DNA of 64,000 bases, taken from positions 124,001 to 188,000 of the forward strand of contig NIVC01002029.1 in NCBI GenBank assembly GCA_002269645.1. Reading direction: 5' to 3'. The notes below the pieces were generated by a model. That model saw nothing but the letters and a program-made list of their open reading frames with translations. It did not search any database and was not told the origin of the DNA. Every line of letters starts with the position of its first letter. The first letter of the stretch is position 1. Shown here piece by piece: positions 1,992-63,484 of the stretch. This stretch comes from Macrostomum lignano. Lineage: Eukaryota. A program made the translations under genes and the position numbers.

Positions 1992-2731
1992 TAGGGGTCA
2001 CAATCCCGGGATTTAGGGCTTTTTCCGGGATCCCCGGATCCTGGGATTCACAGTGTCGGGATTCAATCCCGGAAAGTAAATGCTATGTTTTTATAATGTC
2101 TGATATAATAGCAATTAGCAAGACATAAGTCTTTTATGGCAGTTAGGTAAAATATGGAACATCATGCTTCCATGTCCACTCTCCGTTGCCCACTTTGTAA
2201 AATTTTTTATGTTGTTTTGAGTTCAGTCTTGTTTAAATAATTTAACGTTGATTTTAAACTTTGAACTCATCGTGCATGTCGTGACAACCTGACAACGTGA
2301 ATGCCCACTGCCCAGACAGTAGTAGGTTGTGATTGTTAATGTAATATATACATTCATATTGCTTTGCACAGTGATACATGTATATATTGCATAATCTAAT
2401 ACATGTTATACATAATATATATGCATATTAAAATATTGATATTACGAGTAATAATATACTACTATAATATTTAATATACTACGAGTATGATAACGTCATT
2501 GTTATAATGTTGTATATTACATTACCAGCCTAGCATAACCCTTTAGCTCCTACCATAACTGTTAGCGTTATAAAAATGTCATTCGCAGCATTTTTATAAC
2601 ATTATAACCATGTTATAACAAGGATGGTACTGGAAAATATCAATCCTGGGATAATCCCGGGATCCCGGGATTCGACATTTCCTAATCCCGGGATCCCGGG
2701 ATTAACAGAGTACGGGATTTTTTTACCCCTA
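1992..2731. mobile_element. hAT-type non-autonomous element (MITE) in nicastrin intron 1
   Basis: Ends TAGGGGT...ACCCCTA; perfect 8-bp TSD CCGCCAGG at 1984-1991 and 2732-2739; clustered ATCCCGGGAT subterminal repeats at both ends; no transposase. Confidence 0.88.
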
Positions 2732-2818
2732 CCGCCAGGCGCCAAGCCCTACCCTAAAATCAGATGTACACACGGTCCACAACAGTCCAACCCGCCAATC
2801 TCCCCAACACTTGAACAG

Positions 2819-3262
2819 TGGGGCCAGGGCCAGACGTTGAGGCACAAGCGAGTGTACCGGTCTGTGGGCAGTCACAGTCTTGGCTACTGCGTCCAGATGG
2901 TGACTGGCAGCAGCCGACAGCCAATCGGCTGCCAGAGCCGCATCGGCGGCAATTTCGGTCAACTTCGATGGTGGCTTGACGAAGCCGACCAGTTGAACAG
3001 CGCGGGGGACGCCGCTACTGGCGCCGGCAGGCACTTGGTAGCGGTCGTCAATGACTCGGAGTTCCAGCGTCAGTGGCGGAGAAACTTCGCCGATTGGGGC
3101 AGCGTGAGCGGCGCCATCGTGTTGATGCAGTCGGAAGCTGAGGCTGAGGCTGGCAATCAGACAGCTGCCGCTGTGCGGTGGAGCGGCGGCTGGAACCTGC
3201 CCGACGAACTGCAGGTCGTAGCGGCCCAGGTGCCAATCCCGTTCCCGGCCGTGCTAATTACG
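2819..3262 (+). CDS. NCSTN: Nicastrin exon 2 (small lobe)
   Basis: KRVYRSVGSHSLGYCVQMVTGSSRQPIGCQSRIGGNFG resembles human [42 protein letters not shown]...PFPAVLI resembles WNSLGNG...FPIFLL. Acceptor AG 2817-2818, donor GTAGGT 3263. Confidence 0.85.
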
Positions 3263-3435
3263 GTAGGTGTGCAGATTAGTATCTTATTACATTCTGGACT
3301 TCCGGGTAACGAATGGCGCTGAATGGCTTTTCGCCATAGACAAATCTGCGCTATAAAAATGCACTACAGAGACGGAACAGCTGGGACACAACCGCGTTCA
3401 TCCCCACCCCTCGCTCCTTCTGCCGTCCCGCTCAG

Positions 3436-3831
3436 GCGGACACCCTCGAGGCCGCCGCAGGCCAGTCGTTGCCGAGCCTTCGCCGACTGGCCCGTCTACA
3501 TGCTGGGCTGCACTTTGGCTACTCGGGCCTCACCAACAGCCGTCGGTGCCGCAGGCGCCAGCAGGCCAGGCTCACAGCCGCCCTGGGCCGCTACCTTACC
3601 GGCGAGCTCCAGCCCGGAGCCAATCTGCTGTGCGACTCCCTCGCCGAGGAGTCCTTGGCCTGGACGGCGGCCGAGCTGCCCAGGGCTGTCAGCCGCGGGA
3701 ATCGCAGCGTCCTGCTAGTTGTCGCCAGGCTGGACCAGTTCAGTGTCTTCGCCAACTGGCAAGTCGGCGGCGAGCAGCTGCACAACAGCCTGGCTGTGGC
3801 TGCGTCTCTGGCCGGGGCTCTGGCCGCCTGG
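3436..3831 (+). CDS. NCSTN: Nicastrin exon 3
   Basis: LCDSLAEESL...VLLVVARLDQFSVFANWQVGGE resembles VCDPLSDYNV...[22 protein letters not shown]. Acceptor CTCAG ends 3435, donor GTGAGT 3832, phase 0. Confidence 0.9.
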
Positions 3832-3844
3832 GTGAGTTGTCTTA

Positions 3845-5059
<1,215 letters not shown>

Positions 5060-5061
5060 AG

Positions 5062-5886
5062 CCCCTGCCGCCGTCAATCCCGCAGCCGGAGGTCACGGCA
5101 CCGCGCCAGTCAGCCTGGGCCGGTCGTGACGTGGCCCTGCTGCTGCTGACTGGTGAGAGCTACGGCCACCTGGCCAGCCGGCACCTGGCAGACCAGTTGC
5201 TAGGCAACGGGCTGCTAGGCGGCCGCGGCGAGCCGGCAGCCGTGAAGGCGGATCACGTGCACAGCATCGTGGAGCTGGGACCGCTGAGTCAGGCTGGTGG
5301 CAACCTGAGCAGCTTCAAAGACAACGAAAGTCCGCCCGCCTGGTCGGCTCTAAGCATCCTTCGCCCAGCAACAAAGCGACCCGGCTTGTTGCTAACCAGT
5401 TTCCATGGAAACCAGTCAGCAGCTTTTAAATCGTCGCTAATCGAAGCGTCTCAAACGCTGCTCAGAATGTCGGTCGGCTTCCTGCTCTCCGGCCAGGTCG
5501 GCTCTTCAAACATCTCCCAGCCCGCTGAGCTCAGCGCGGCCGCTGCTGCCCGACTGGCTGAGGCCGAGGACTGCCTGCGCCTGCGGGTCGGCCGGCGCTG
5601 CAGCGCCATCTTCGACGGCCCGGACCTCCAGCAGGGCCGGCAGGCGCTGGCCCGCAGTCTGCACCGCTGGCGCAGGGGTGTCGGCGTCGCGGCCAGTCTG
5701 GGCCCGGAAGGTCCGATCGCCAGTGCCGCCAACTCGGCGTTGAAGCAGTTGGGGCACGCCGTGGGGACGCGACTGCTGCTGAGCAGCCTGCTGCTGCGGT
5801 TCACCCTGCGGCCGCGGCGGCCGGGGCAGCCGGACGGATGTCCGAAAATTCCTAAGGACGATAGTGCGCCGGTCAGGGGCTACTGG
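5062..5886 (+). CDS. NCSTN: Nicastrin exon 4 (large lobe, DAP region)
   Basis: RDVALLLLTGESYGHLAS...VHSIVELGPL resembles RNVMFVFFQGETFDYIGS...VDSFVELGQV. Acceptor TCAG ends 5061, donor GTGAGT 5887. Confidence 0.9.
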
Positions 5887-5898
5887 GTGAGTGCATAG

Positions 5899-6168
5899 AT
5901 TAGCAATCCATCTGTGTAGATAGACTAGCAATCCATCTAAGTAGATAGACTAGCAATCCATCTAAGTAGATAGACTAGCAATCCATCTAAGTAGATAGAC
6001 TAGCAATCCATCTAAGTAGATAGACTAGCAATCCATCTAAGTAGATAGACTAGCAATCCATCCAGAGGCAGACTAGCAATCCACCCAGAGGCAGACTGGC
6101 AATCCACCCAGAGGCAGACTGGCAATCCACCCAGAGGCAGACTGGCAATCCACCCAGAGGCAGACTGG
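5899..6168. repeat. 25-bp then 23-bp units with a TAGCAATCCA / TGGCAATCCA core, nicastrin intron 4
   Basis: TAGATAGACTAGCAATCCATCTAAG changes to CCAGAGGCAGACTGGCAATCCAC. Confidence 0.9.
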
Positions 6169-6190
6169 CTTTATTACCCCTTTCCAACAG

Positions 6191-6484
6191 GTGCTGCTAA
6201 ACGGCAGCCGGCACTGCCAGTTCAGCTCTCTGGCCAGTTTCTGGCTGGGCCCGGACAATCCGGACAATGAGTCATTGCCGGACTGGTCAATGTCCGTGAC
6301 GGACAGTCAGCCCAAGCTAGTTCTGTTTGTGACCGCCTCGGCCAGGGTTCAGTGGCTCACGGCTGCCTTTGGCTTCGTGCTGGGCCTGCTGTGGACTCAC
6401 CTGACCGCCGCGGCGGCTCTGCACTGGCAAGAAATGCAACAAAAAGAATCGCCGAGCCAAGAGGCCGCTCAGCTGAAGAAGTGA
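6191..6484 (+). CDS. NCSTN: Nicastrin exon 5 (TM helix and short tail)
   Basis: PDWSMSVTDSQPKLVLFVTASARVQWLTAAFGFVLGLLW resembles [37 protein letters not shown]. Acceptor CCAACAG ends 6190, stop TGA 6482-6484. Assembled protein about 665 aa. Confidence 0.88.
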   Translation: MLLNGSRHCQFSSLASFWLGPDNPDNESLPDWSMSVTDSQPKLVLFVTASARVQWLTAAFGFVLGLLWTHLTAAAALHWQEMQQKESPSQEAAQLKK

Positions 6485-31640: not shown

Positions 31641-32379
31641 GAGACTTTAAAAAATATGTCTAAAGAACTCATCCGGCACAACAGGGGGGGGGGCACACGC
31701 GTCACTTGTCGGAAAAATGAATATGCTCGCATTAGACCCAATATAAGATCCGAGCTCGGGAAGTCATCGAGTCGCCAGGGGCCGAGTCGGGAGTCCCAGC
31801 GGTTGGCCAGCTTGAGCAGCTCTGACGATCTTTCCCCATGGGATCGGCGGCCGTGAGGAGCCGGAGTGGTCCCCTGGCCGCTGTTCCCCATTTTCCTCCC
31901 TAATTCCTTTGCCTTCTCTCCCTCTTTCTTTCGAATGCTTCGCCTTTAACAGGACGCCGCACCGACCCCGGGGAGAAGGCTGGACAGCGGCTTCATCGCT
32001 GCTTTGAATAATTGCAATTTGGCCCCGGCTGAGAAGGCTGGCGGGCGGCAGATGCTAGCGAAAATATGAGGAGAGCCATTTTTCTCAGCGATGTGGAGGA
32101 AGGGGCGACTCTCGTGTCTCCATTTTTTTCTTTCCCTTGCTTCCTTCGGGAAATTTAGGCGACCAAAAATCGACTCGACAAATTTTGAGTCACGTGATTC
32201 GCTAGGGACAGGAGACTCAGTAATTTGGCAACGGATCACTTCGGCGTCAGCTAATTTATTGCTTCCAAGCCAGGTTGACCGAGCCAAAATTTATGATCTT
32301 AAAGTGACTTCCTATTTGAAGAAGAGAGATTCTTCGAACACCCGGAATCACTCTAGTCATACCCGGGATCCTTTAGAAC

Positions 32380-32560
32380 CCCTCTGGGGAAACCCATCTG
32401 GGGAAACCCCTCTGGGGAAACCCCTCTGGGGAAACCCCTCTGGGGAAACCCCTCTGGGGAAACGCCTCTGGGGAAACCCCTCTGGGGAAACCCCTCTGGG
32501 GAAACCCCTCTGGGGAAACCCCTCTGGGGAAACCCCTCTGGGGAAACCCCTCTGGGAAAC
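32380..32560. repeat. 14-bp array GGGGAAACCCCTCT, ~12 copies
   Basis: Next to the exon 1 donor. Confidence 0.93.
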
Positions 32561-32587
32561 CTTGAAAATGTAGCAGAAATGACTCAC

Positions 32588-33014
32588 CGTAGACGAACAG
32601 GTAGATGGTGCACTGATCCTTGGCCTCGCCGGGATCCTCAACGCGAAACTTCACGTAACACCGGTAGACGCCCTGGTCGCTGACCCGCACATCCTTCAGC
32701 TTCAGGCTGGCCTCCGAATACACCGATAGGCGGCCAACAAACTCGGTGGCAAGCGTGGGCTCGAAGGACTCAAACCTGTCGAACACGGCCTGCTGCAAGC
32801 CGTCACGGCGCCACTGCACCTGGTGCGGCACCAGCACGTTGGCGTTCGCCGGGTAGCGGAGCTGGCATTCGAACAGCACGTCGCTGCCAACGGCCACCTC
32901 CTTGGCAATCTGGCGCCGAGTCCGCGACAGCAGCGGCTGCATGGCGTGGCCCAGCCGACCGGCTTGTAGAAGCAGCAGCAGCGACAGCAGGAGCAGCAAG
33001 CCACCCGGAGCCAT
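32588..33014 (-). CDS. IGSF9: Turtle/IGSF9-like receptor exon 1 (signal peptide + Ig1)
   Basis: MAPGGLLLLLSLLLLL signal; GSDVLFEC...VQW...FVGRLSVYSEASLKLKDVRVSDQGVYRC resembles IGSF9B Ig1 (YAGRASLHDKASLRLEQVRSEDQGWYEC). Donor GTGAGT, phase 1. Confidence 0.88.
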
Positions 33015-45996: not shown

Positions 45997-46204
45997 CTGC
46001 GGGCATTGCGAGAGTGAATTAAAACAAGGTCATCCCAGGTCAACAGGGAGGTCAGCAGGTTCACTGGCAAAAAAATTCGGCGGTCGCTAGAAAAAATAGG
46101 TCACTTCAGTTTCTAGGAAAACAGTTGGTTTGAATGTAGGAATTCTAGGAAACTGACACATGCTTGAGCTGACATAAATTTCGCCGCAGAATATCATTTC
46201 TCAC

Positions 46205-47007
46205 CTGTCGTTGACCCCGCCGACGAAGCCGCAGCGCCGCGGCAGCCGTCAGCCGTAAGTGCAACGGGAGTCGCCGTTGCGGCGTGTCCGGGGTAGCCAG
46301 ACTGCTGGAGCCGCCGACCACGGCGGCCAGCGGCGACGCAGTCGCGGCTTTCAAAGCTTCGCCAACGTGTCGCACAGTCGGCGAACCATCGGCCAGTTCA
46401 ACGGATCGGCGGCAGACTTCCAGGAGGCGTCGGGCATCTCCGGTGCTGGCGGCGATTCGGCCAGCTGCCAGTCGGACAGCGTCGGCGGTTTCGGCAGCCA
46501 GCGCGGCCGGGGCCGCGGCGAATCGGGCGGTGACGATGGCGAGCAGGTCGGCTCGGGTATAGGGCGAGAAACTGAGCTGGCGAAGGCCGGCTGGCCGGGA
46601 CACGGTGGCCGAGGCGGGGAACAGCCGGTCGCACAGGCTCAGCGAGTTGGCCACGCCTAGTACGCGAAGCCGGTTGCCGTCGCCAGCTCCGGCCAGACTG
46701 TCCGGCCAGCGAAAGATTCGCCGAAGATTGGCCAAGTCAATCTGGTCGATTTCGTCCAGCACCAGAGACAGCGACTGCTGCTGCTGCTGCAGGAAGCGCC
46801 TGATGGCCGCCTCCGCCAGCTTCAAAGAGCCGGCGCCGCCATCTCCGCCGCTGTTAGCGGAGCTATTTTTAGCATCAACCAGCTGGGCCAGCTGAGCAGA
46901 GAATGACTTGGCGGATTCGCCAGTCTCCATGCAGTTGTGCAGAATACAGCGGACGCCTTTGACAGATTGCAGCTTGCGAACGGCGGTTTTAACGGCGGCA
47001 GTTTTGC
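46205..47007 (-). CDS. CDC6: CDC6 exon 3 (AAA+ core)
   Basis: Completes GAPGSGKT; Walker B LVLDEIDQI; VLGVANSLSL; FSPYTRADL; GDARRLLEVCRRSVELA resembles human GDVRKALDVCRRAIE. Confidence 0.95.
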
Positions 47008-52943: not shown

Positions 52944-53034
52944 CTGCGGCAGTGGGCAACGGACGAATTAGATAAAAAATAGATTAGAAGTTAGACTATT
53001 AAAATCGCGTAGTGTCAGACTACATGGACTCTAA

Positions 53035-53238
53035 CGGTGTCACACTAGTGTTGTCAGACTCTAGTGTTGTCAGATTAGTGGGTGTCAGACTCTAGTGGTG
53101 TCAGACTCTAGTAGTTTCAGACACTAGTGGTGTCAAACCGGTGTCAGACTCTAGTGGTGTCAGACTCTAGTGGTGTCAGACTCTAGTAGTTTCAGACACT
53201 AGTGGAGTCAAACCGGTGTCAGACTCTAGTGGTGTCAG
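53035..53238. repeat. 16-bp array TGTCAGACTCTAGTGG, NDUFS2 intron 1
   Basis: Seen directly. Confidence 0.9.
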
Positions 53239-53401
53239 TTGAACTAATGAAGGTAAATAGAAGGGGGTCAAAGTCTGGAGGTTGTGACGGGTTCAAAAAT
53301 CGATCGGGGTCAGCTGAGTCCATGGGGTGGGGAATCCAGTGGACTCAAAGTCAAAACGTGTACAGGATTGGACCCGCCAAGCAGCCAATTTATGCGCTCA
53401 C

Positions 53402-54349
53402 CTGATCGTAGGCATCGTATGGCTGGGATTTGCGCAAGTCCCAGCAGATGCCGGAGCCGCGAAGCATCACCCCAGAGAAGCCATAGTTGAGCGCATCCTC
53501 CGCGCTGATCACACCGATATCCTTGGTTCGCATCACCCAGATGCGATTCTCAGTTAGCAGATCATCCACCTCGTCGATTCGCTGTACAAACTTCTTATTC
53601 CAATCGTAGATATCCTCGAGCAGGCCGACTGGCAGGTCCCGGTCCACGCCGCCGGGCCTGACGTAGGCGGCGTGCATTCTGGCGCCGCTGACTCGCTCGT
53701 AGAACTCCATCATCTTTTCGCGCTCCTCGAACATCCAGAAGAATGGCGTCATGGCGCCAACGTCGAGCGCGTGAGTGCCGATGCCCATGAGGTGGTTCAT
53801 GATTCTGGTCAGCTCGCCGAACAGCACCCGGATCCACTTGGCCCGGGGCGGCACATCAATATTGAGCAGTCGCTCAACAGCCAACGAGAAGCACTGCTCG
53901 TTGCACATCATTGACACATAGTCTAATCTATCGAAATAAGGCAGCGCCTGAGTGTAAGTCTTGTACTCGATCAGCTTCTCAGTGGCCCGGTGCAGCAGGC
54001 CGATGTGCGGATCGGCTCGCACGACAGTCTCACCGTCCAGGGTGAGCACCAGCCTGAGCACACCATGAGCAGCCGGGTGTTGCGGACCAAAATTTATCGT
54101 CATATTTAGCACCTGCTTGTCCCGATCCTCCATAGCGCCAGTCTGCGGCAGGAACGGCTCCCATTTGCTGGCCCATTTCTGGTCAGGATGAGTGGCTAGC
54201 ATGACTTGCTTGTCGATGGTTCGCCTGTCGGCAACGTACTGCTCAGCATAGCCGCGCCGGCACTGCTGCTGAGCTGGCAGCGGCTGGCGCAGCAGAGCCA
54301 GCTGGGTGAGCCTGCTGCTGGCCTGGCGTAGCAGGGCGGTGGCCGACAT
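53402..54349 (-). CDS. NDUFS2: NADH:ubiquinone oxidoreductase 49 kDa subunit, exon 1 (with mitochondrial presequence)
   Basis: [41 protein letters not shown]; Arg/Leu/Ala-rich presequence; GTGAGC donor, phase 0. Confidence 0.98.
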
Positions 54350-54459
54350 TGGTTTTTTAAAATAAATATTAACTGTGTATATTCAGTGTATTAGCAGTAT
54401 AGTTCAGCTGAGTCTGTTGTAAGTCGGCTGAAGTAGTAAGTGCATTAATATTTAAATAT

Positions 54460-54767
54460 TATTAATTATTATTGTTGATTACATGTCATAATTAAACCAG
54501 ATGTGCAGCCGACAGCTTGGCCGCAGCTTTTGTATGGCGCATCTGAAGGCTGCATACGGCTGTTCAGTCCAAGGACTGGGGGGGTCGCCCCACACATCCT
54601 CAATTACCCCAGCTAATGCTGGCACCCATTTTACAGCTGGGTGAACTGAAGCAATGCAGAGTTAAGTGTCTTGCTCAAGGACACAAATTGTTCCAGTGGG
54701 ATTGGGAATCGAACCCCTGACCTTTAAGTTATGAGTCTAATGCTCTAACCATTAGACTACAACAACC
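54460..54767 (-). mobile_element. tRNA-derived CORE-SINE
   Basis: Minus strand: tRNA-like head with A box TAGTCTAATGG, CAT anticodon loop and B box GGTTCGATTCC. Next comes TGTCCTTGAGCAAGACACTTAAC...CAGCTGTAAAATGGG, resembling the MIR CORE domain, then an (AAT)-rich tail. Confidence 0.78.
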
Positions 54768-57393
54768 TATATATTTAAAAATATAAATAAAATTTTAAAG
54801 TATTTTAAATTCATTGGGATGATAACTAGCATTAGACACAATATTCAAAAAAGTAATGCCAATACCTGAAAGTCTGGTACTTTATGGCATTACTTGGTTT
54901 TTTAAAAAAGCAAGGTTTTAAGGCAAAGAAAGCAAGCTTAGCATTGTTTTAAATGAAGAAACTTTGGTAAAACAAATAAAATAAAATTACCAAATTAAAA
55001 AGAAACAATTGCCACTTTATTCAATCAATTAGCTACTTTAGACAGTCTTATTTATATATATTAGTACTATTATCATTTGAGTATAGTGTTGCAGCCTGCT
55101 AATCTGCAATTGCTGCACCTGCATGCTTAATCCTTTAGTTTGATAAGGGGTTGGGTGCACTTAGTCATCTAAGCAGACTGACTGCTCTAAGCAAAGCTAG
55201 ACTTAAAAGCCTTACCTTTGATTAGGCAATATCTTGCCCTACTGCTCTCTATATGTAAACCTAAATAAATTACATCACTTTTCTTCATTTTACTCAACTT
55301 GGCCTTGCTCTGAGCACCTAAATAGTGGATTTATTTATTTATTTCTGATTGTTTACTTGTTTACTAAATTACCTGTGCTACTACTAGTGTATTACTAGTA
55401 TATTTACGATTATAAAAATTATAGAATCAATTGACAATCAACATATAATCAATTGATAGTAAATCTATTGCAGAGCTTGCAGCATAATAATTGATAAATA
55501 AATAATATCCTTTTAATGATGATTAATAACTACCAACTAATTATAAAGCATATATAGCCAAGGATATTTCTTTAAAATTATAAAAACTTTTCAAGAAAGA
55601 AAACATTTGTAACTTTTTACTAGATTAGCTAGATTAGACCTAATTATTTTACCTTTATTGACCTAAATATATAGTATTTATTATTTTTTAAAGTATTTAA
55701 CTATTTCATTTATTTTAAAGAAATTTTATATATTTTTTAATTTTCAAATTTTAAATAGCATTGATTGGGAAAATTTAAAAATTATACGAAGTTATAGGCT
55801 TAGAAATCCAATGCTAATAAAAATATTGGCTTCCAATACTCCAATACCTAAAAGGTATTGCCAATAGTATTAGAATATCACATAATCAAAATTGTGCCTA
55901 ACACTGATGATAATAAATTTTATTAGGCATATCTTTTCTATAATTGGCTTATTAAGAAAACTAACAATTTAAATATGCTAAATTTTGCTTACTATAAGTG
56001 GAAAAAAATAAAGCAATTGGTTATAATGAAAATACAAAAAATGTATTTTGTATAGTCTTACCATGTATTTTTTTAATTCTAAGACTGACTTTAAAAGTAT
56101 TATTGTAAAGGTTTCGACTATTTTGGCTATAGGCCCATTATATTTATTCTTATTTTTATTAGTAAATAAGGATAGAAAAGGCCTAAAAGTATTGAAAATA
56201 CTAGTGAAAAAAGTTTTTGGGAACAGATAATCAATATCTAAATAGACAAAATATTATAAAAATGTTGGAAATTTTAGATATGAAAAGTTTTATGTTTAAA
56301 CTGGCAAAATGTTCATAGGACATTTAGGTGAATACTACACTCCAGATCATATAGTATACACCCAAAAATTGGGCATGCATTGGCCTTGTATGACAAAAGT
56401 TAGGCATATATAGTTGGCATGCATGACTTCTAAAATAGTGTGCCTGGACACCTGGCATGCACAATATAGAATTGTATAAATTTCAAGTTTTCTAGCTTTT
56501 AGGCTCATTAATTAGATATTTAAATAAATGTTTGTGAGTATTTATTTTTTACTAGAAAAAGTAAAGGTAAGAAAAATAAATAAATATTATTTTTATATTT
56601 AAAATTATTTATTTTATTTTAAATTTAGAATTTTAAATTATATTAAAATTATAGCATACAAAGAGACCTAGAATATACCATTGGCATACAACTTAATGAA
56701 TCCAGGACTATTTGTCTACATTGGGCAAATGGCCAATGGACTATGTCTGCCGGTGCTAAATAATGGATGTGGTACATAGGTTTTTGGACACTTTGGCAAC
56801 AGATGTTTTAGCAACATCATAAAACATCTAAATAATACGTACAATAGAGTTCCTAATTTTGATATATTGTGTCACTAAAATACATTGCAAAAAATTGCCA
56901 TAAAATGTGCACTATTATAATCCAGACTAAGGCAGTAGTCTTATCTACTTCTTATCTACTATTCTCTTATCTACTTTTTCTCCACAGTAAAACCATGCCG
57001 CAGTAAAAAATGGAAGCCATTGTATTGGACATAATCTACACAAATGAAATTACCTTGCTATTGAAAATCCCTATAAACTAAATCTCTAAGGTTTGTATAT
57101 TTGACTTTTTATAAAGTCAATCTGATTCTAAGAAAGTATATACTTTTAACAAAGCCAACTTTTTTCGTTTTTAAAAATTCTAGAATATAATTATTTATAT
57201 TAAGTTTGTTATTTTGCTTGAAAAATGCATTCAAAAATGAAAAAATGTGTATAACTTCGGCTTACATGTTGAAAACATTTTTTGCCTTGGTGTACAAATG
57301 TTTTCTTATACTTTTTCTCCCACTAGACCAGGCGTACATTAAAATGCAATCCAAACTATGGCCTTTTGCTCTTGGTAGGCAGTAGGCTTATGG

Positions 57394-59162
57394 GGCATAA
57401 ATTTACTTTTGTTCGTGAATTTTTTTCTTTTAAAATGGTGCCAATGACATGGAATGACAAATGGGAGTTGTCTATAGCCCATATTAGCTGCATAGAGTTG
57501 TTTGGGGCACAAAAATTTGGCAGAGTTTTATTGAGCCCTCACTATAGTTTGGACTTTAGAGACTCTTCTGATTTGCAAATGGCTGGACTGCCCCTAAGAC
57601 CATCATGGATTGGGCCACTGAATGAAGTTCTGCCAGCACAGGCACTAACGGAACTAAATATGAATTCAAGGGATCTGATGGAAGTGACAGCAAGTACTGA
57701 CGAGACTATGTGGTGGCTCACTTGTCATGGACTATTAGCCAACCAATGGACCTGCCCATGTGCCGCGCATACACCGATGAATCTGCAGCACAATGGAAAG
57801 CAATTCATTAATGGCTATGCCTAGGACTGTAAAACCTGTTGAAACCAAGAGAGCATATGCAAGGGCTCCTTTTTGGAGGCTAGCCATCTGGACTTGCAAT
57901 AGCTGATCACCCTATTGCAATGCTGGGCCAAAAACGAGTCCATGTCAACCATCATGCACAAGTGTTGCATCAGTAGCCGCACTGCCATCAACTGGCTCAA
58001 CTTCATTCGTGACGTCTATTGCCAATACTTTGTGAATCACATGATGCAGCTGGGTGGCCCTGGTCACATGGTCGAGATTGACAAAAGTTGGTTCTTCTAC
58101 CGCAAGTATTACCAGGGAACCTATCATGACAGTCACTGGGTGCTTAGAATGATGGAACAAGGCTCGCCCAAGTGTGTCATGGTCATTGTACTAGACAGGT
58201 CTGCTGCTGTACTGCTGCCCATCATCTAGCAGTATATCCTACCTGGCATGCGGATCCTGACAGATGGCTAGCAAGCATATAATCAAGTGGCAAATGCTGT
58301 CAGTGGTCTTGGTAATCATGGTGTCATTAATTATAGGCTCCACTTTGTGGACTCCAATGACCCCACACTGCACACAAACACAATTGAAGGGACATGGGGC
58401 AATTGCAAAGCAAAATTCTGGGCCATGCATGGCACTAGCAATGCCCTCTTTGCAGGGTTTTTTGTGCGCAGAGTGTGCATATGCACCCTAAATTTTAAAA
58501 TTGCACCCTGAAATTAAAAAAGTAGGTGTAGTTTAGGTGCGGTCTTATAACCATTTTTTAAAGGCTTAACCATGCTTAAGTTATTTTTCATGCACTGCTT
58601 TAAAATATGAAACAAAATAACTCTTTAAATCCTATTAAGTCATATATATAGGCAATATAGCCTATGGCTATAGCCTTATGTAAGATATTAAAATATATAT
58701 TCCCAGTTGTCTGAAACAAGACTCAAGAGAAATTGCACTCTGAGCCTTAAAATCGCACCTTGAAATTTGGCACAAGGTGCGATTTTGCACCTTGTCTCTG
58801 GCAAAAAACCTAGCCTCTTTGAATCGCACATCCAAGAGTATCTATGGCGACGCTTTTACCCAGGGCCTACTAAGGCTTTTGGCAGCATTCTGTACTGGAT
58901 TTGTAATTATTACCCAGTTTAGGAATCTGAGACAGTCAGGACTACATTGAACTAAACTGAGTAATGCTCAGTGCCATTTAAAAATGTTTCCCACCAGTTG
59001 TTACCAGTTGATGTTATGAGCTAAATAAAACTTAGCTGAATTTTTGTGCCCCAAACATCTCTATACAGCTAGTACAGGCCATAGACAACTCCCATTTATC
59101 ATTCTGTGTCATTGGCACCATTTTAAAAGAAAAAATTTTGCGAACAAAAGTAAATTTATGCC
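57394..59162 (+). mobile_element. Merlin (IS1016/IS1595-like) DNA transposon, inactivated
   Basis: About 140-150-bp diverged TIRs beginning GGCATAAATTTAC at 57394 and ending GTAAATTTATGCC at 59162. Flanks GCTTATGG / ACTAATTG match 5/8, a possible decayed TSD. Encloses an ISXO2-like transposase. Confidence 0.85.
57660..58511 (+). pseudogene. Merlin/ISXO2-like DDE transposase pseudogene
   Basis: One frame: LLANQWTCPC...GGPGHMVEIDKS.F.RKY..G...WV...ILPG.RILTDG*QAY...FVDSNDPTLHTNTIEGTW. Five in-frame stops (57822, 57840, 57900, 58227, 58269) and no frameshift. Confidence 0.9.
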
Positions 59163-59191
59163 ACTAATTGGCTAATTGGCTATAGACTTTA

Positions 59192-59584
59192 CGAAGAGCT
59201 TGCGTGCATGGCCGCCGTTCACGTAAGCTCAGAATTGCGTGCACGGCAGAGCTATATCTTATAGGCTTATACAGTAAGTCATATACTATTTGAATTAATA
59301 TTCAAGTTAACAAAAAAACAATGAATTAAGATTAAATTTGCAGTCCATGGTGTACGGGGGATAAAACATTATAAAACAATATAGTAAAAATATTTTTTAA
59401 TTAGGTTTGCAATGCCAATGCGTGGATTTAAGGGCCCCAGTCCCGGCCAATTGCCGGCTGCCGTGCACGCAATTACAACACTAGGTGTACGGCTGCATAC
59501 ATGCAAATAAAGCACTAGGTAGATAGCCGCCGTGCACGCAATTCTGAGCTTACGTGAATGGCTGCCGTGCACGCAAGCTCTTCG
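59192..59584. mobile_element. MITE with ~63-bp TIRs and a 9-bp TSD (Mutator- or Merlin-type)
   Basis: CGAAGAGCTTGCGTGCA... and ...TGCACGCAAGCTCTTCG ends; perfect TAGACTTTA at 59183-59191 and 59585-59593; internal CCGTGCACGCAATT repeats. Confidence 0.88.
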
Positions 59585-62085
59585 TAGACTTTATAACTTT
59601 GTAGTATACAGAGATTGCCAAGATAGCAGGTAAGACTGAGACCAAGTTGTAAGTAGTTGTAAGTCCAAAACAATTTATACAGTGTATAAAAATGCCCTTT
59701 AGTAGTTTAATTTTAGTTTAGCATAGGGTATAGGCCTAGGCCTAGTCCTAGTCGCTACCAACATAGCTAAATTTTGATCAAAAAGGAATATCTCCTTTAA
59801 AATAATAATAAGGCTCACCTAGGACTAGGTTCAAAAAGTCAGGACAGGGCAGGCATGACCAGCCAACATGAGGCGTGACCGGCGAACACATTTTGGTTGA
59901 AAATAACTGATAGCTAGGCCTAGCATTCGACCCGGAATTCGCGCGAAAGACGGAGCTAAGGCCTAAGCGACAGACGGAGAAGACATCATAAAACTGAAAT
60001 AAAAAATTATACAACAGACAGAAGTACTATAAAACGACGAGTGTGTTTGAGACGAGTAGACGACTGGGTCTGAGACTTAGGCTAGTCAGTCTTAAGGCTG
60101 GGCATGAATGGCCTGCGCATTCGGCATTCAGCGCCGCCGGCGCGCGAATAATAATTGATTTTTGGGATTTGGCGTGTTTGTAAATGTGCATGTCTCAGAA
60201 TTTGTCAGTTAAACAAAAAGTCAATGACTCTAAATTTGTTTTAAAAAAGGAAATAATGGTATCGAAAATTATGAGAAAAAATTTCAATACAAAGTTACAT
60301 TAGGCACTTGATATTAGGATGTCTTAATAAACTTATTTGTATTTGGTTATTTTTAATCGTATTGCGCTACATCTGACTAATGCTTACGTTGTTGCGCCTT
60401 AAAAACAGGATGCAGCCATAGGTAATTCTCTGTCTGAGTTCAAGGTACCCGCGAGCATGAATAGCGAAATTTCAGATTTCATTATATTTTAATAAGGTGA
60501 GCTACGGAATCACGGCAGATTTAATCGCAAAATCTTAGAATAAACATGACATGTACTCGTAAATTCGTTTTTTGGTGATAAATGCACAATTTGAACACTT
60601 AGTTTTTCTAATGGTTCTTGATAAAACATATTATTAAAATTAGACAAGATTTATTTTTTTTTCAAGTCGACGAAAAAGTCGCTGCTGACAATAAATACTA
60701 TCTAGTAGAAATGATCGCCTAATTCTACTCTCGTGATCGATCGAAGATACTATACATCTAGAAATTAGAGTGTTCAGAAATACACTCAGAGATACACGTA
60801 GCAATACCGATTTCTTCCGTGTATATGCTACGCGCATGTCTTGAATCCAAGGACTACTACTAGACTTGAAGGGCGCAAACACTTGCAAATCGCGTGCAAA
60901 AATAGCTGAAGGCCGATTATTAATGTCTGTTTCTCTAAATCGATTGCACGTAGGTTATTTTTTCGCTAGATTGTTCAGCTTTTTGTCGCCTACCATGCAC
61001 GAAGTCAGGCAGTTTAGTTTTTCCACTAGATGTAGATGCAAGAAAATCCTGTACAATGTAGACATCCTATTTTTGGGCATATGGTAGCTTTATTCAAATC
61101 TTCGAGTTTAGGAAGCAAAATTATAACGAGAGTGTAACGTCCTTTATACATGTACATGTATAACGAAGTGTTCCTAGTGGTACTTGTTTGACTCTAGGAT
61201 GCTTAATTAGGTACTTCATTGTACCTAAGGTGCAAAATTGTTGCATGTAAATTATAAGTGCACGATAGTGACGACTGGTGAACAACTTTAAGTCACTTTT
61301 GCATTCGAATTTTTGTCAGCAAAGCTGCAGATCGAGTCAGCCACGGCAGATGGCCTATAAAGCATTCGAACGTTTGCAATGTTAACACATTGCTGCTGTG
61401 CAAAGAACCGTGAGAAAAAACCACTGTAAATATGCTTGGATACTGCTTGGAGGAATGTATGAAAAATGAAAAATAAAATAAAATAGAGTGTCATGCTTCT
61501 GTATTATATATCTGATCTGATTGAATTATTACTAAATTAAAGGCCATTAAAGTCAACAAAATAAAGATCAAACAATACACAAACGATCATATGCAAATAC
61601 ACCGTGAATAAACTACGTAGATAATAATAGATAATTGCATTCCAGGGCGTAGCCGGGAGGGGGGGTCGGTGTTTCCAATTAGACCGGCAAAAACTTTTCG
61701 CTTCTGTTCCCTGTTAGCAATTCCTCAACAACTACATTGGCATCCCTTGGTGCGATGGTGACCCTATACTGTACCAAGGTCACATTTCAAGCTCTCTCGC
61801 TGTCCATCCCGCGCTGGTACCCCTAGTTAAACGATCCTCCAGCTACGCCCGTGCTACAAGTACAGTACGTGCCGATTAAAATTAGTTTCCATGCACAAAA
61901 AATATAATGGTCGGCAGCAGGCAACAAGTGAAAGACGTGCCAATAAAAATTTCGAAGCTTAAAATTTTCTAATAATTCAATAAGCCGTGATAGAATCATA
62001 CTGTACAAATAAAAAAATATCGATATTAATACATATAAAGCATGTATTAGGGATGAATAAGTTATTTTAAATATCAAGCAATAAA

Positions 62086-62118
<33 letters not shown>

Positions 62119-62524
62119 GGCACAACAAAAATTTATTAAAAATTGCCAAATGAATTTCCAAATATAGATAAAAGAAGATAAACTAAGTAAATTTTAAGGA
62201 TTAATATGTTGGAAATCTGCTATATTGTTGACTCGCATCAGTCACTTATGCTTGGGTTCCAATGTGGGGTCACTCTGAAACTATAGACACCGCATGAGAC
62301 AGTCGATCAGGGCGTGCCTGTGCGAGTGCGTTCCTGCCTGTGTACGTGACGTGTGTGCTCAAGGATCAGCGAAAGAGACATCTGCTTGTCGCCTTGATAG
62401 TGCCCGAAGCCTACATGTGACTTAACAAGATAGTACTAATTACCGTTTACATATATATATGTGTGAATCATTTTCCCTTTAGAAGAAAATAATTAAACAT
62501 TAAATTAGAAGCCAAATATTAGAT

Positions 62525-62809
62525 TTAGTTCATTATAACTCCACTGACAGTTTGAGTTGGAGCACTGCCATCCGCGCTGTTACTCGATGCATCCGCCTCT
62601 GTTTGTGGCATCCTAAAGATGGCCAGGCGGCGTTTCAAGTCGTAACTGAACAACGTCACCACTGCACCGTTGGTTGACCGGACGAAGAACACGTCTGTGT
62701 GCGCCACGAACTTGGCGCTCTCTCGACCGGAGCGCCAGACGCGCAGAGTCTGATCACGGGATCCGCTGATCACCGGGCTGGCCAGGTCGGTAAAGTGGCA
62801 GCAGCGGAT
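62525..62809 (-). CDS. WD40-repeat protein, probable last exon
   Basis: A 79-nt intron joins GHTDL to IRCCHFTDLASPVISGSRDQTLRVW, completing a WD40 repeat. Confidence 0.8.
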   Translation of the reverse strand: MRCCHFTDLASPVISGSRDQTLRVWRSGRESAKFVAHTDVFFVRSTNGAVVTLFSYDLKRRLAIFRMPQTEADASSNSADGSAPTQTVSGVIMN

Positions 62810-62888
62810 CTGGGGTAATTGTGCCGGGTAGAAAACTCCATTTTGGATTCGACTCGTTGGAATCAGCAAGTCGTCATAAAGCTCTCAC

Positions 62889-63140
62889 CAAATCCGTGTG
62901 CCCAGCGAGGATCTGCAGGCAGCTGTAGTCTTTGAGAGACCAGATTTTTAGCAGGCTGTCCAGCCCGCACGAGGCGAAGGCGTCGCCAGTCCTGTTGACT
63001 TTCAGTGCTACAATCTCGTGCTCGTGTGCTGACTTGATGATGGTCACGTGATGGAAGCGCAGTACGGAACCCTCGGACTCAACGCGTTGTCGAGCTTCCA
63101 GACGCGACATTTCCGGTACTGCAAACTCAACGTCCGCTGG
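62889..63140 (-). CDS. WD40-repeat protein exon
   Basis: AHEHEIVALKVNRTGDAFASCGLDSLLKIWSLKDYSCLQILAGHTDL is a canonical WD40 repeat. Phase 0-0. Confidence 0.85.
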
Positions 63141-63484
63141 CTGCGGGTGCAACAATTTTTAAAGAGTTTCTAAGGGTCTAAAATGCTCTTGCGAAAAATT
63201 ACGAAGCTTAGAGAGTTTTGAGATTCAACACGTTTGCTAAGATCTTATATGTCCTAAGGTACTAAAGGTCCCGAGGGTCCTGAAGGGAAAGCTTTACTTA
63301 ATTCTTGGTCGAAGGATCAAGAAAATCTAATAGAAGGATGCGAAGATCACTAAGCAGCTATACATATAAATAAAAGACCGACACAAATTAGTCGGACGGA
63401 AGCTCAGGCTATTGCTGAAGAGCTCAGACTAACGAGATCTAAAATAACTCAGAAAAAATCAATATGCACCAGGACCAATCTCAC

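What the first reader, a model, noticed from the sequence alone, without database searches (positions are those of the whole stretch)
57394..59162. Merlin transposon apparently killed only by C->T/G->A changes at CpG and CpA: a RIP-like signature in an animal
Seen: five stops and no frameshift in ~280 codons. Relative to Merlin/ISXO2 consensus motifs as I recall them, every lesion is a transition. CpA/TpG type: W->TAG (57822, 58269), probable Q->TAG (57900, 58227), DGY->NGY, KYH->KYY, WVxG->WVLR, VPDR->VLDR and NH->NY. CpG type: probable R->TGA (57840), SIR->SIC, DES->DKS, HRG->xQG, ER->EQ and PGT->PGM. The two TIRs differ the same way (CGTGAA/CGCAAA, GACAAA/GATAAA, TGCATA/TGTATA, TATAGC/TATGGC), and the flanking 55-60 kb DNA looks CpG-poor and TA-rich by eye. 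Established: 5mC deamination erodes CpG, DNMT3 enzymes also methylate CpA, and fungal RIP converts CpA to TpA in repeats but is not described in animals. Inference: a TE-targeted methylation/deamination defence with strong non-CpG activity. Ancestral codons are inferred, not observed.
Basis: partly seen in the sequence, partly recalled or inferred. Interest (0 to 1): 0.76.

Follow-up and report, generated by a model that had tools for sequence, protein, structure and literature searches.

The report
Dead Merlin transposon, mostly CpG decay
This is an old, broken Merlin DNA transposon in the flatworm Macrostomum lignano, worn down mainly by the ordinary loss of methylated CpG sites; an extra excess of C-to-T changes before A is real in this one copy but too thin to call a fungal-style (RIP-like) defence.

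Summary
The element is real: a 1,769-bp Merlin/IS1595-type transposon (57394-59162) with 143-nt inverted ends. One reading frame carries five stops and no frameshift.

The host is Macrostomum lignano, which the literature says keeps DNMT1 and DNMT3. At conserved codons, 19 of 23 one-step changes are C>T or G>A.

Rates per available site:
- CpG 7/15
- CpA 9/48
- CpC 3/39
- CpT 0/17
- A>G 0/114

Most evidence points to ordinary CpG decay:
- CpG observed/expected is 0.27 and CA/TG is enriched.
- The inverted-end "CpA-type" differences are CpG sites hit in both arms. A sister locus still has CG at one of them.
- RIP indices are clearly negative.
- Transition-made stop codons must arise at CpA or CpG anyway.
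- Neighbouring tandem repeats, duplicated loci and flanking DNA show no CpA bias.

Four other decayed Merlins from other hosts show CpA 4/168 against 9/48 here (p = 2e-4). The inverted ends and a whole-gene comparison do not reproduce this excess.

Verdict: ordinary methylation-driven decay plus an unresolved single-copy hint of non-CpG deamination. It is not RIP.

The parts
57394..59162 (+). Whole decayed Merlin (IS1595-like DDE) DNA transposon, 1,769 bp including a nested insertion
   Evidence: Inverted ends. The single-frame transposase remnant matches Pfam DDE_Tnp_IS1595 at 1.4e-11. The best homologue is 56% identical.
57394..57536 (+). Left terminal inverted repeat, 143 nt
   Evidence: 88% complementary to the right arm, with 17 differences and no gaps.
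59020..59162 (-). Right terminal inverted repeat, 143 nt
   Evidence: Position 59037 is T here and C (CpG kept) in the sister locus L002.
57579..58452 (+). Transposase reading frame, part 1 (ATG 57579). Holds in-frame stops at 57822-57824 TAG, 57840-57842 TGA, 57900-57902 TAG, 58227-58229 TAG and 58269-58271 TAG. The DDE residues are kept: D at 58080-58082, D at 58263-58265, E at 58386-58388.
   Evidence: Translation; alignment A1; codon table.
58445..58452 (.). Target-site duplication CCTCTTTG of the nested insertion, copy 1
   Evidence: Read from the sequence; coordinates computed.
58453..58813 (.). Nested 361-bp non-coding insertion (MITE-like, ends CAGGGTTTTTTG / CAAAAAACCTAG) that interrupts the transposase frame
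   Evidence: Removing it together with one copy of the duplication restores the frame and the homologous C-terminus (...HGTSNALFESHIQEYLW...). It is also present in sister locus L002.
58814..58821 (.). Target-site duplication CCTCTTTG, copy 2
58822..58922 (+). Transposase reading frame, part 2, ending at the natural stop TAG 58920-58922 (...WICNYYPV*)
   Evidence: The C-terminus aligns with the homologues' ...WIRHYYPV.

Best explanation
An old, immobile Merlin transposon lies in the intergenic DNA upstream of the NDUFS2 gene of Macrostomum lignano. It has decayed neutrally in a genome that methylates cytosines.

The dominant mechanism is spontaneous deamination of 5-methylcytosine at CpG (CG>TG or CA) in the germ line. 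This sits on top of a generally GC>AT-biased background.

Shown: the stops and most missense lesions are C>T or G>A. Inferred: the ancestral codons, and methylation as the cause.

Part of the apparent "CpA" class has ordinary explanations. Any stop made by a transition must arise at CpA or CpG. CA/TG is the commonest C-containing dinucleotide. The inverted-end examples are double-hit CpGs. What remains is a modest CpA>TpA excess at conserved codons of this one copy. I treat it as unresolved: chance, or low-level non-CpG methylation.
For: **The element and its host**
- Element anatomy.
- NDUFS2 is 99% identical to M. lignano PAA89658, and the window is 100% identical to NIVC01002029.1.
- Literature: M. 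lignano keeps DNMT1 and DNMT3 and has low-level 5mC (PMC11292947; PMC9246332; PMC10658182).
- CpG loss by C-to-T in methylated transposons is established (PMC7431005).

**CpG decay is the main signal**
- The per-site rate is highest at CpG: 7/15 in codons and 8/20 in the inverted ends.
- Merlin CpG observed/expected is 0.27 and CA/TG is 1.51.
- There are four TG/CA double differences between the arms, one confirmed by CG retained in L002 at 59037.
- Asymmetry against the closest intact relative's DNA is confined to CpG: 22 against 7, p = 0.008. CpA gives 35 against 32.
- The intact relative has 34 CpG; this copy has 16.

**No RIP-like signal nearby**
- RIP indices are negative.
- The inverted ends outside CpG show 5 transitions to 4 transversions, like the background.
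- Flanking DNA and minisatellites show no CpA preference.
Against: - CpA>TpA at conserved codons is 9/48 here. It is 4/168 in four other decayed Merlins and 0/42 in an intact one, using the same method (p = 2e-4). CpC+CpT, CpG and transversion rates are the same in both sets.
- Non-CpG C>T against A>G is 12 against 0, compared with 10 against 8 in flanking DNA (p = 0.01).
- Non-CpG C>T against transversions is 12 against 4, compared with 10 against 16 in flanking DNA (p = 0.03).
- There are no small indels in 972 nt of coding sequence plus 286 nt of inverted ends, despite roughly 6-8% substitutions. This suggests substitution-heavy decay.
- These points leave room for an extra deamination process outside CpG.
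Confidence: 0.65

Rival explanations
1. Methylation directed at transposons or at this domain, with real non-CpG (CpA) activity. A DNMT3-type enzyme would methylate CG and, more weakly, CA in this element in germ-line or stem cells. Deamination would then give CG>TG and CA>TA.
For: - The rate order at conserved codons is CpG 7/15 > CpA 9/48 > CpC 3/39 > CpT 0/17, with A>G 0/114.
- The CpA rate is 8-fold above four decayed Merlins from other hosts, while the other classes are equal.
- One CpA-type event (57810, TG>TA) is directly seen as recent against the sister copy.
- DNMT3 is present according to the literature.
Against: - This is a single copy with nine events, and the pattern was noticed before it was tested.
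- Within the copy, CpA against CpC+CpT gives p = 0.06.
- The inverted ends show CpA 3/40 against CpT 2/24.
- Whole-gene asymmetry in the CpA context is nil, 35 against 32.
- CA/TG is enriched and TpA is low at 0.73.
- There is no CAC or CAG motif preference.
- An adjacent foldback element keeps its CpGs, so methylation is not aimed at every transposon.
- No methylome is available.
Confidence: 0.2
2. A RIP-like, repeat-induced point-mutation system. Duplicated DNA would be recognised and hit by bursts of C>T at CpA and CpG.
For: C>T or G>A dominates (19 of 23), with CpG and CpA contexts leading. This superficially resembles the RIP dinucleotide preferences of some fungi.
Against: - RIP product index is 0.68, substrate 1.72 and composite -1.04. 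The thresholds are >1.15, <=0.75 and >0.
- Dozens of tandem arrays in the same window stay 90-98% identical, with equal C>T rates at CpA, CpC and CpT.
- The 10-kb sister locus (98.4%) and the homeolog (about 94-95%) show transitions roughly equal to transversions and no C>T burst.
- The Merlin differs at only 3 sites between the sister copies.
- RIP is described as fungus-specific (PMC7882544).
Confidence: 0.03
3. Editing by an AID/APOBEC-like cytidine deaminase acting on single-stranded transposon DNA.
For: There is an excess of C>T and G>A outside CpG (12 events).
Against: - The 5' neighbours are mixed (T3, C4, A4, G1), with no TC, CC or WRC motif.
- Events fall on both strands (8 on minus, 4 on plus) and are not clustered.
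- Cut-and-paste elements have no reverse-transcription intermediate.
- A survey found no such editing in invertebrates or in DNA transposons (PMC4866542).
Confidence: 0.03

Closest known systems
Merlin superfamily of eukaryotic DNA transposons (related to bacterial IS1016/IS1595; Pfam DDE_Tnp_IS1595)
   Same: It has the DDE transposase domain with the D, D and E residues retained, an N-terminal Cys-rich region, long terminal inverted repeats and a single-ORF layout. Its homologues come from many animals.
   Different: The closest protein in 5.8 billion sequences is only 56% identical. No M. lignano Merlin protein is annotated. The 8-9-bp target duplication is no longer recognisable. The copy is dead and carries a nested insertion.
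CpG decay of methylated transposons in animal genomes (5mC deamination; e.g. PMC7431005)
   Same: CpG observed/expected is 0.27. TG/CA is in excess. CpG has the highest rate per site. Double-hit CpGs are visible between the inverted ends. The sister copy retains CG at one such site.
   Different: The host is a flatworm whose methylation pattern is not described (PMC9246332). Depletion is patchy: the left flank and the Merlin are depleted, while the right flank and an adjacent foldback element are not.
Fungal repeat-induced point mutation (RIP)
   Same: C>T transitions inactivate a transposon through stop codons. CpA and CpG contexts are prominent.
   Different: The RIP indices are negative. 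Nearby repeats and duplicated segments are untouched. There is no AT-rich collapse of the element (GC 0.44). No burst is visible between the sister copies.
Non-CpG (mCA) methylation by DNMT3 enzymes in vertebrate pluripotent cells, oocytes and neurons
   Same: The context order CpG >> CpA > others would fit the excess seen at conserved codons.
   Different: No methylation data exist here. No CAC or CAG preference is seen. Significant germ-line mCA mutagenesis is not established in invertebrates. The signal is absent from the inverted ends.
APOBEC editing of retroelements in vertebrates (PMC4866542)
   Same: Deaminase-type G>A and C>T changes create stops in mobile elements.
   Different: There is no 5' motif, no strand bias and no clustering. 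This is a DNA transposon in an invertebrate, and both of those served as negative controls in that study.

Membership tests
Merlin / IS1595-like DNA transposon | DDE transposase of the IS1595/ISXO2 type | tested here: met
   Pfam PF12762 at 1.4e-11, 45 bits against a cutoff of 27. The D, D and E columns are retained.
Merlin / IS1595-like DNA transposon | Terminal inverted repeats flanking the transposase gene | tested here: met
   143-nt arms, 88% complementary, at the exact ends 57394 and 59162.
Merlin / IS1595-like DNA transposon | 8-9-bp target-site duplication | tested here: inconclusive
   The flanks GGCTTATGG and ACTAATTGG match at only 3 of 9 positions, or 6 of 9 with one gap. No empty site was found in homeolog L001.
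CpG-methylation-driven decay | CpG depletion with a matching TpG/CpA excess | tested here: met
   CpG observed/expected is 0.27 and CA/TG is 1.51. The intact relative has 0.57 and 1.39.
CpG-methylation-driven decay | C>T rate per site highest at CpG | tested here: met
   CpG 7/15 in codons and 8/20 in the inverted ends, against CpA 9/48 and 3/40 and other contexts at 8% or less. L002 keeps CG at 59037.
CpG-methylation-driven decay | Host has DNMT1/DNMT3 and 5mC at the locus | not testable with these tools
   The literature says DNMT1 and DNMT3 are retained and 5mC is low.
Repeat-induced point mutation (RIP) | RIP indices: TpA/ApT >1.15, (CpA+TpG)/(ApC+GpT) <=0.75, composite >0 | tested here: not met
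   The values are 0.68, 1.72 and -1.04. Thresholds are from PMC7882544.
Repeat-induced point mutation (RIP) | Duplicated DNA in the same genome is hypermutated | tested here: not met
   Minisatellite arrays show equal C>T at CpA, CpC and CpT, about 3 per kb. Sister and homeolog loci show transitions roughly equal to transversions.
Repeat-induced point mutation (RIP) | CpA>TpA clearly above other non-CpG contexts | tested here: inconclusive
   9/48 against 3/56 (p = 0.06) within the copy, and 9/48 against 4/168 in other Merlins (p = 2e-4). Against that, the inverted ends give 3/40 against 2/50 and the whole-gene asymmetry is 35 against 32.
Repeat-induced point mutation (RIP) | RID/Masc1-type methyltransferase in the genome | not testable with these tools
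   No proteome-wide search of M. lignano was available.
AID/APOBEC-type editing | 5' motif (TC, CC or WRC), strand bias and clustering | tested here: not met
   The 5' bases are T3, C4, A4 and G1. The strand split is 8 to 4. Events are spread over 57720-58419.

The most novel reading that the evidence does not exclude
Macrostomum lignano methylates some transposons in its germ line or stem cells at CpA as well as CpG, presumably through DNMT3. Deamination then leaves a CpG+CpA C>T mutational footprint on transposons. That would be a non-CpG, methylation-driven inactivation signature not described in an invertebrate. It would resemble RIP in outcome, though not in its dependence on repeats.
Probability: 0.15. 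Interest if true: 0.6.

Novelty: new member of a known kind. Interest (0 to 1): 0.27.

Why it matters
As it stands, the finding is a routine dead transposon.

Its modest value is indirect sequence evidence that parts of the M. lignano genome have undergone CpG-specific decay. These parts are an AT-rich intergenic domain and the Merlin inside it. [quoted passage not shown]

If the CpA excess proved general across transposon families, it would point to mutagenic non-CpG methylation in an invertebrate germ line. The genome assembly plus one methylome would be enough to test that.

Tried and rejected
**1. More copies of the family for a true consensus**
- Two protein searches found no relative above 56% identity and no M. 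lignano Merlin.
- A metagenome scan for the inverted-end sequence found nothing.
- The homeolog L001 has neither the element nor an empty site.
- Only one sister copy (L002, 3 differences) was recovered.

**2. A second dead coding transposon in the available M. lignano DNA, to replicate the codon test**
- Stop-to-stop segments of L001 and of both flanks gave no transposon domains.
- The Pfam tool refuses translations that contain stops.

**3. Reading Wasik et al. 2015 for methylome details**
- The paper is not held.

**4. Explanations considered and rejected**
- UV dipyrimidine damage: only 5 of 9 CpA events have a 5' pyrimidine.
- Transcription-strand asymmetry: 4 events on plus against 8 on minus, the wrong direction.
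- A method artefact: the intact P0001 gives 0 C>T in 113 opportunities.
- Five of five transition stops as evidence on its own: probability 0.07-0.2.

**5. Exact look-up of the NDUFS2 exon ORF**
- Nothing was found. The host was identified by homology instead.

Full report
**What is there**

Positions 57394-59162 are bounded by 143-nt inverted repeats, 88% complementary and without gaps. Between them lies a single reading frame. It starts at ATG 57579 and ends at the natural stop 58920-58922. It carries five in-frame stops: TAG 57822, TGA 57840, TAG 57900, TAG 58227 and TAG 58269. There is no frameshift.

The frame is split by a 361-bp non-coding insertion (58453-58813) flanked by an 8-bp duplication, CCTCTTTG. 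Removing it restores the conserved C-terminus.

The product matches Pfam DDE_Tnp_IS1595 at 1.4e-11 and keeps the D, D and E columns. The closest protein among 5.8 billion is only 56% identical. So this is a decayed Merlin-type transposon from a family without close described relatives. Its target duplication is no longer recognisable, and no empty site could be found.

**Host and locus**

The neighbouring ORF 53390-54349(-) is the first exon of NDUFS2 and is 99% identical to Macrostomum lignano PAA89658. The window is 100% identical to contig NIVC01002029.1 of GCA_002269645.1 (L003).

A sister locus, NIVC01001326.1 (L002), is 98.4% identical over window 53027-63010. It carries the same Merlin, the same nested insertion and all five stops. 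A third locus, L001, is about 94-95% identical. Its homology ends near 57256, and it has no Merlin.

The literature states that M. lignano retains DNMT1 and DNMT3 and has low-level 5mC (PMC11292947; PMC10658182). It also states that genome-wide patterns are unknown in free-living flatworms (PMC9246332).

**The mutation spectrum**

I aligned the pseudo-protein with 15 homologues (A1). I took columns conserved at 80% or more and inferred the nearest ancestral codon. Of 23 one-step changes, 19 are transitions. All 19 are C>T or G>A. Four changes are transversions.

Rates normalised by the number of possible non-synonymous changes of each class:

| Class | Observed / possible |
|---|---|
| CpG | 7/15 |
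| CpA | 9/48 |
| CpC | 3/39 |
| CpT | 0/17 |
| A>G | 0/114 |
| Transversions | 4/585 |

The method is not biased. The intact relative P0001, analysed on its own DNA, gives no C>T in 113 opportunities. One event is seen directly: 57810 is A here and G in L002, so D>N is recent.

**Why most of this is ordinary CpG decay**

1. CpG has by far the highest rate, 47% in codons and 40% in the inverted ends.
2. Eight of the 13 transition differences between the inverted ends are four TG/CA double differences. This is the pattern expected when one ancestral CpG decays on the same genomic strand in both arms. L002 still has CG at 59037, which confirms the inference. Outside CpG the arms differ by 5 transitions and 4 transversions, like the background.
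3. The Merlin has CpG observed/expected 0.27, CA/TG 1.51 and TpA 0.73. The intact relative's gene has 0.57, 1.39 and 0.67. So CpG was lost and CA/TG was gained.
4. A site-by-site asymmetry test against P0001's DNA shows a net C>T flow only at CpG: 22 against 7, p = 0.008. CpA gives 35 against 32.
5. CpG-type differences also occur between the sister loci and between the arms of an adjacent foldback element. CpG hypermutability is therefore regional and not special to this element.

**Why it is not RIP**

- The RIP product index is 0.68, the substrate index 1.72 and the composite -1.04. Published thresholds are >1.15, <=0.75 and >0 (PMC7882544).
- The same window holds dozens of minisatellite arrays. 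Their singleton variants, polarised by the array consensus, show equal C>T rates at CpA (3.0 per kb), CpC (3.2) and CpT (3.5), with A>G at 2.0.
- Flanking DNA polarised with L001 gives CpA 4/423, CpT 4/384, CpC 2/272, CpG 1/188, A>G 8/1908 and 16 transversions.
- Duplicated segments at 98% and 94% identity are not hypermutated. The Merlin differs at only 3 of 1,769 sites between the sister copies.
- Any stop codon produced by a transition must come from CAA, CAG, TGG (mostly CpA/TpG context) or CGA (CpG). The contexts of the stops are therefore close to forced.
- Five of five stops by transition has probability 0.07-0.2 under the local bias.
- An APOBEC-like process is unlikely. There is no 5' motif, no strand bias and no clustering. 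Such editing was absent from invertebrates and from DNA transposons in a large survey (PMC4866542).

**What remains unexplained**

I ran the same codon test on four other decayed Merlins from unidentified hosts (L005-L008).

| Class | Four other copies, pooled | This copy |
|---|---|---|
| CpG | 32/92 | 7/15 |
| CpA | 4/168 | 9/48 |
| CpC | 10/153 | 3/39 |
| CpT | 4/66 | 0/17 |
| A>G | 6/430 | 0/114 |
| Transversions | 19/2228 | 4/585 |

The M. lignano copy matches the others in every class except CpA: 9/48 against 4/168, p = 2e-4.

Against the local flank, non-CpG C>T is also high. Relative to A>G it is 12:0 against 10:8 (p = 0.01). Relative to transversions it is 12:4 against 10:16 (p = 0.03). 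The second comparison weakens to p = 0.07 if the five two-step columns are counted. There are also no small indels in 972 + 286 nt.

On the other side:
- CpA against CpC+CpT within the copy gives only p = 0.06.
- The inverted ends show CpA 3/40 against CpT 2/24.
- The whole-gene asymmetry is nil.
- No CAC or CAG motif is seen.
- The pattern was noticed before it was tested.

I therefore treat the CpA excess as a single-copy hint. It is compatible with weak non-CpG methylation and equally with chance.

**Verdict**

This is a new but ordinary member of the Merlin superfamily, killed by a nested insertion and by deamination-type transitions. CpG decay in a DNMT1/DNMT3-bearing flatworm is the main cause. 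The RIP analogy fails its defining tests. The idea of strong non-CpG activity is neither established nor excluded. Multi-copy consensus spectra and one methylome would settle it.

Noticed in passing
window 1-53238: About 30 distinct minisatellite arrays (periods 8-134 bp, up to 179 copies, 75-100% unit identity) fill most of the first 53 kb. They create long spurious ORFs of up to 994 aa. Real exons lie between them: an Ig V-set exon at 32376-33014(-), a Cdc6/ORC-like lid at 46148-46930(-) and a weak nicastrin-like hit at 2624-3319(+).
   Followed up: partly
window 58453-58813: A 361-bp AT-rich nested insertion sits inside the Merlin frame, with an 8-bp target duplication (CCTCTTTG) and short imperfect inverted ends (CAGGGTTTTTTG / CAAAAAACCTAG). 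It also contains internal AAATTGCACCYTG repeats. It is probably a MITE. Its superfamily was not determined.
   Followed up: partly
window 59181-59595: A foldback or MITE-like element lies 19 bp to the right of the Merlin, with 67-nt arms 91% complementary. It is CpG-rich (observed/expected 1.17, 21 CpG). Two of its six arm differences are CpG>TpG or CpA. The sister locus keeps CG at 59559 where the window has TG.
   Followed up: partly
window 54350-63400: CpG content switches sharply. The left flank 54350-57393 has GC 0.29 and CpG observed/expected 0.25. The right flank 59163-63400 has GC 0.40 and CpG observed/expected 1.09. The Merlin sits at the boundary. This suggests mosaic methylation domains.
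   Followed up: no
window 56907-61498 against L002: The two sister loci differ at only 6 sites across this 4.6-kb block (0.13%), against about 0.9% on either side. The Merlin alone has 3 differences where 15.7 are expected (Poisson p = 1e-4). This suggests recent gene conversion or recombination between the copies rather than anything specific to the transposon.
   Followed up: partly
window 54518-54519 against L002: There is a TG against CA double difference between the sister loci. One ancestral CpG decayed independently in both, which is direct evidence of ongoing CpG hypermutability in unique DNA near the NDUFS2 start.
   Followed up: no
L001 about 3812-6411: The homeologous locus carries about 2.6 kb not present in the window, between the counterparts of 57191 and 57200. 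Synteny is lost beyond window 57256. No protein domain was found in its longest open segments.
   Followed up: partly
L006 and L008 (ENA contigs carrying P0012 and P0009): These database "proteins" are decayed Merlin copies. Their in-frame TGA stops were read as W by the gene caller, which used an alternative genetic code. Apparently intact metagenome ORFs of this family can therefore be pseudogenes.
   Followed up: partly
L002 1-1359: There is a run of N (an assembly gap or masked stretch) at the end of the sister locus. This is why its alignment with the window stops at 63010.
   Followed up: no
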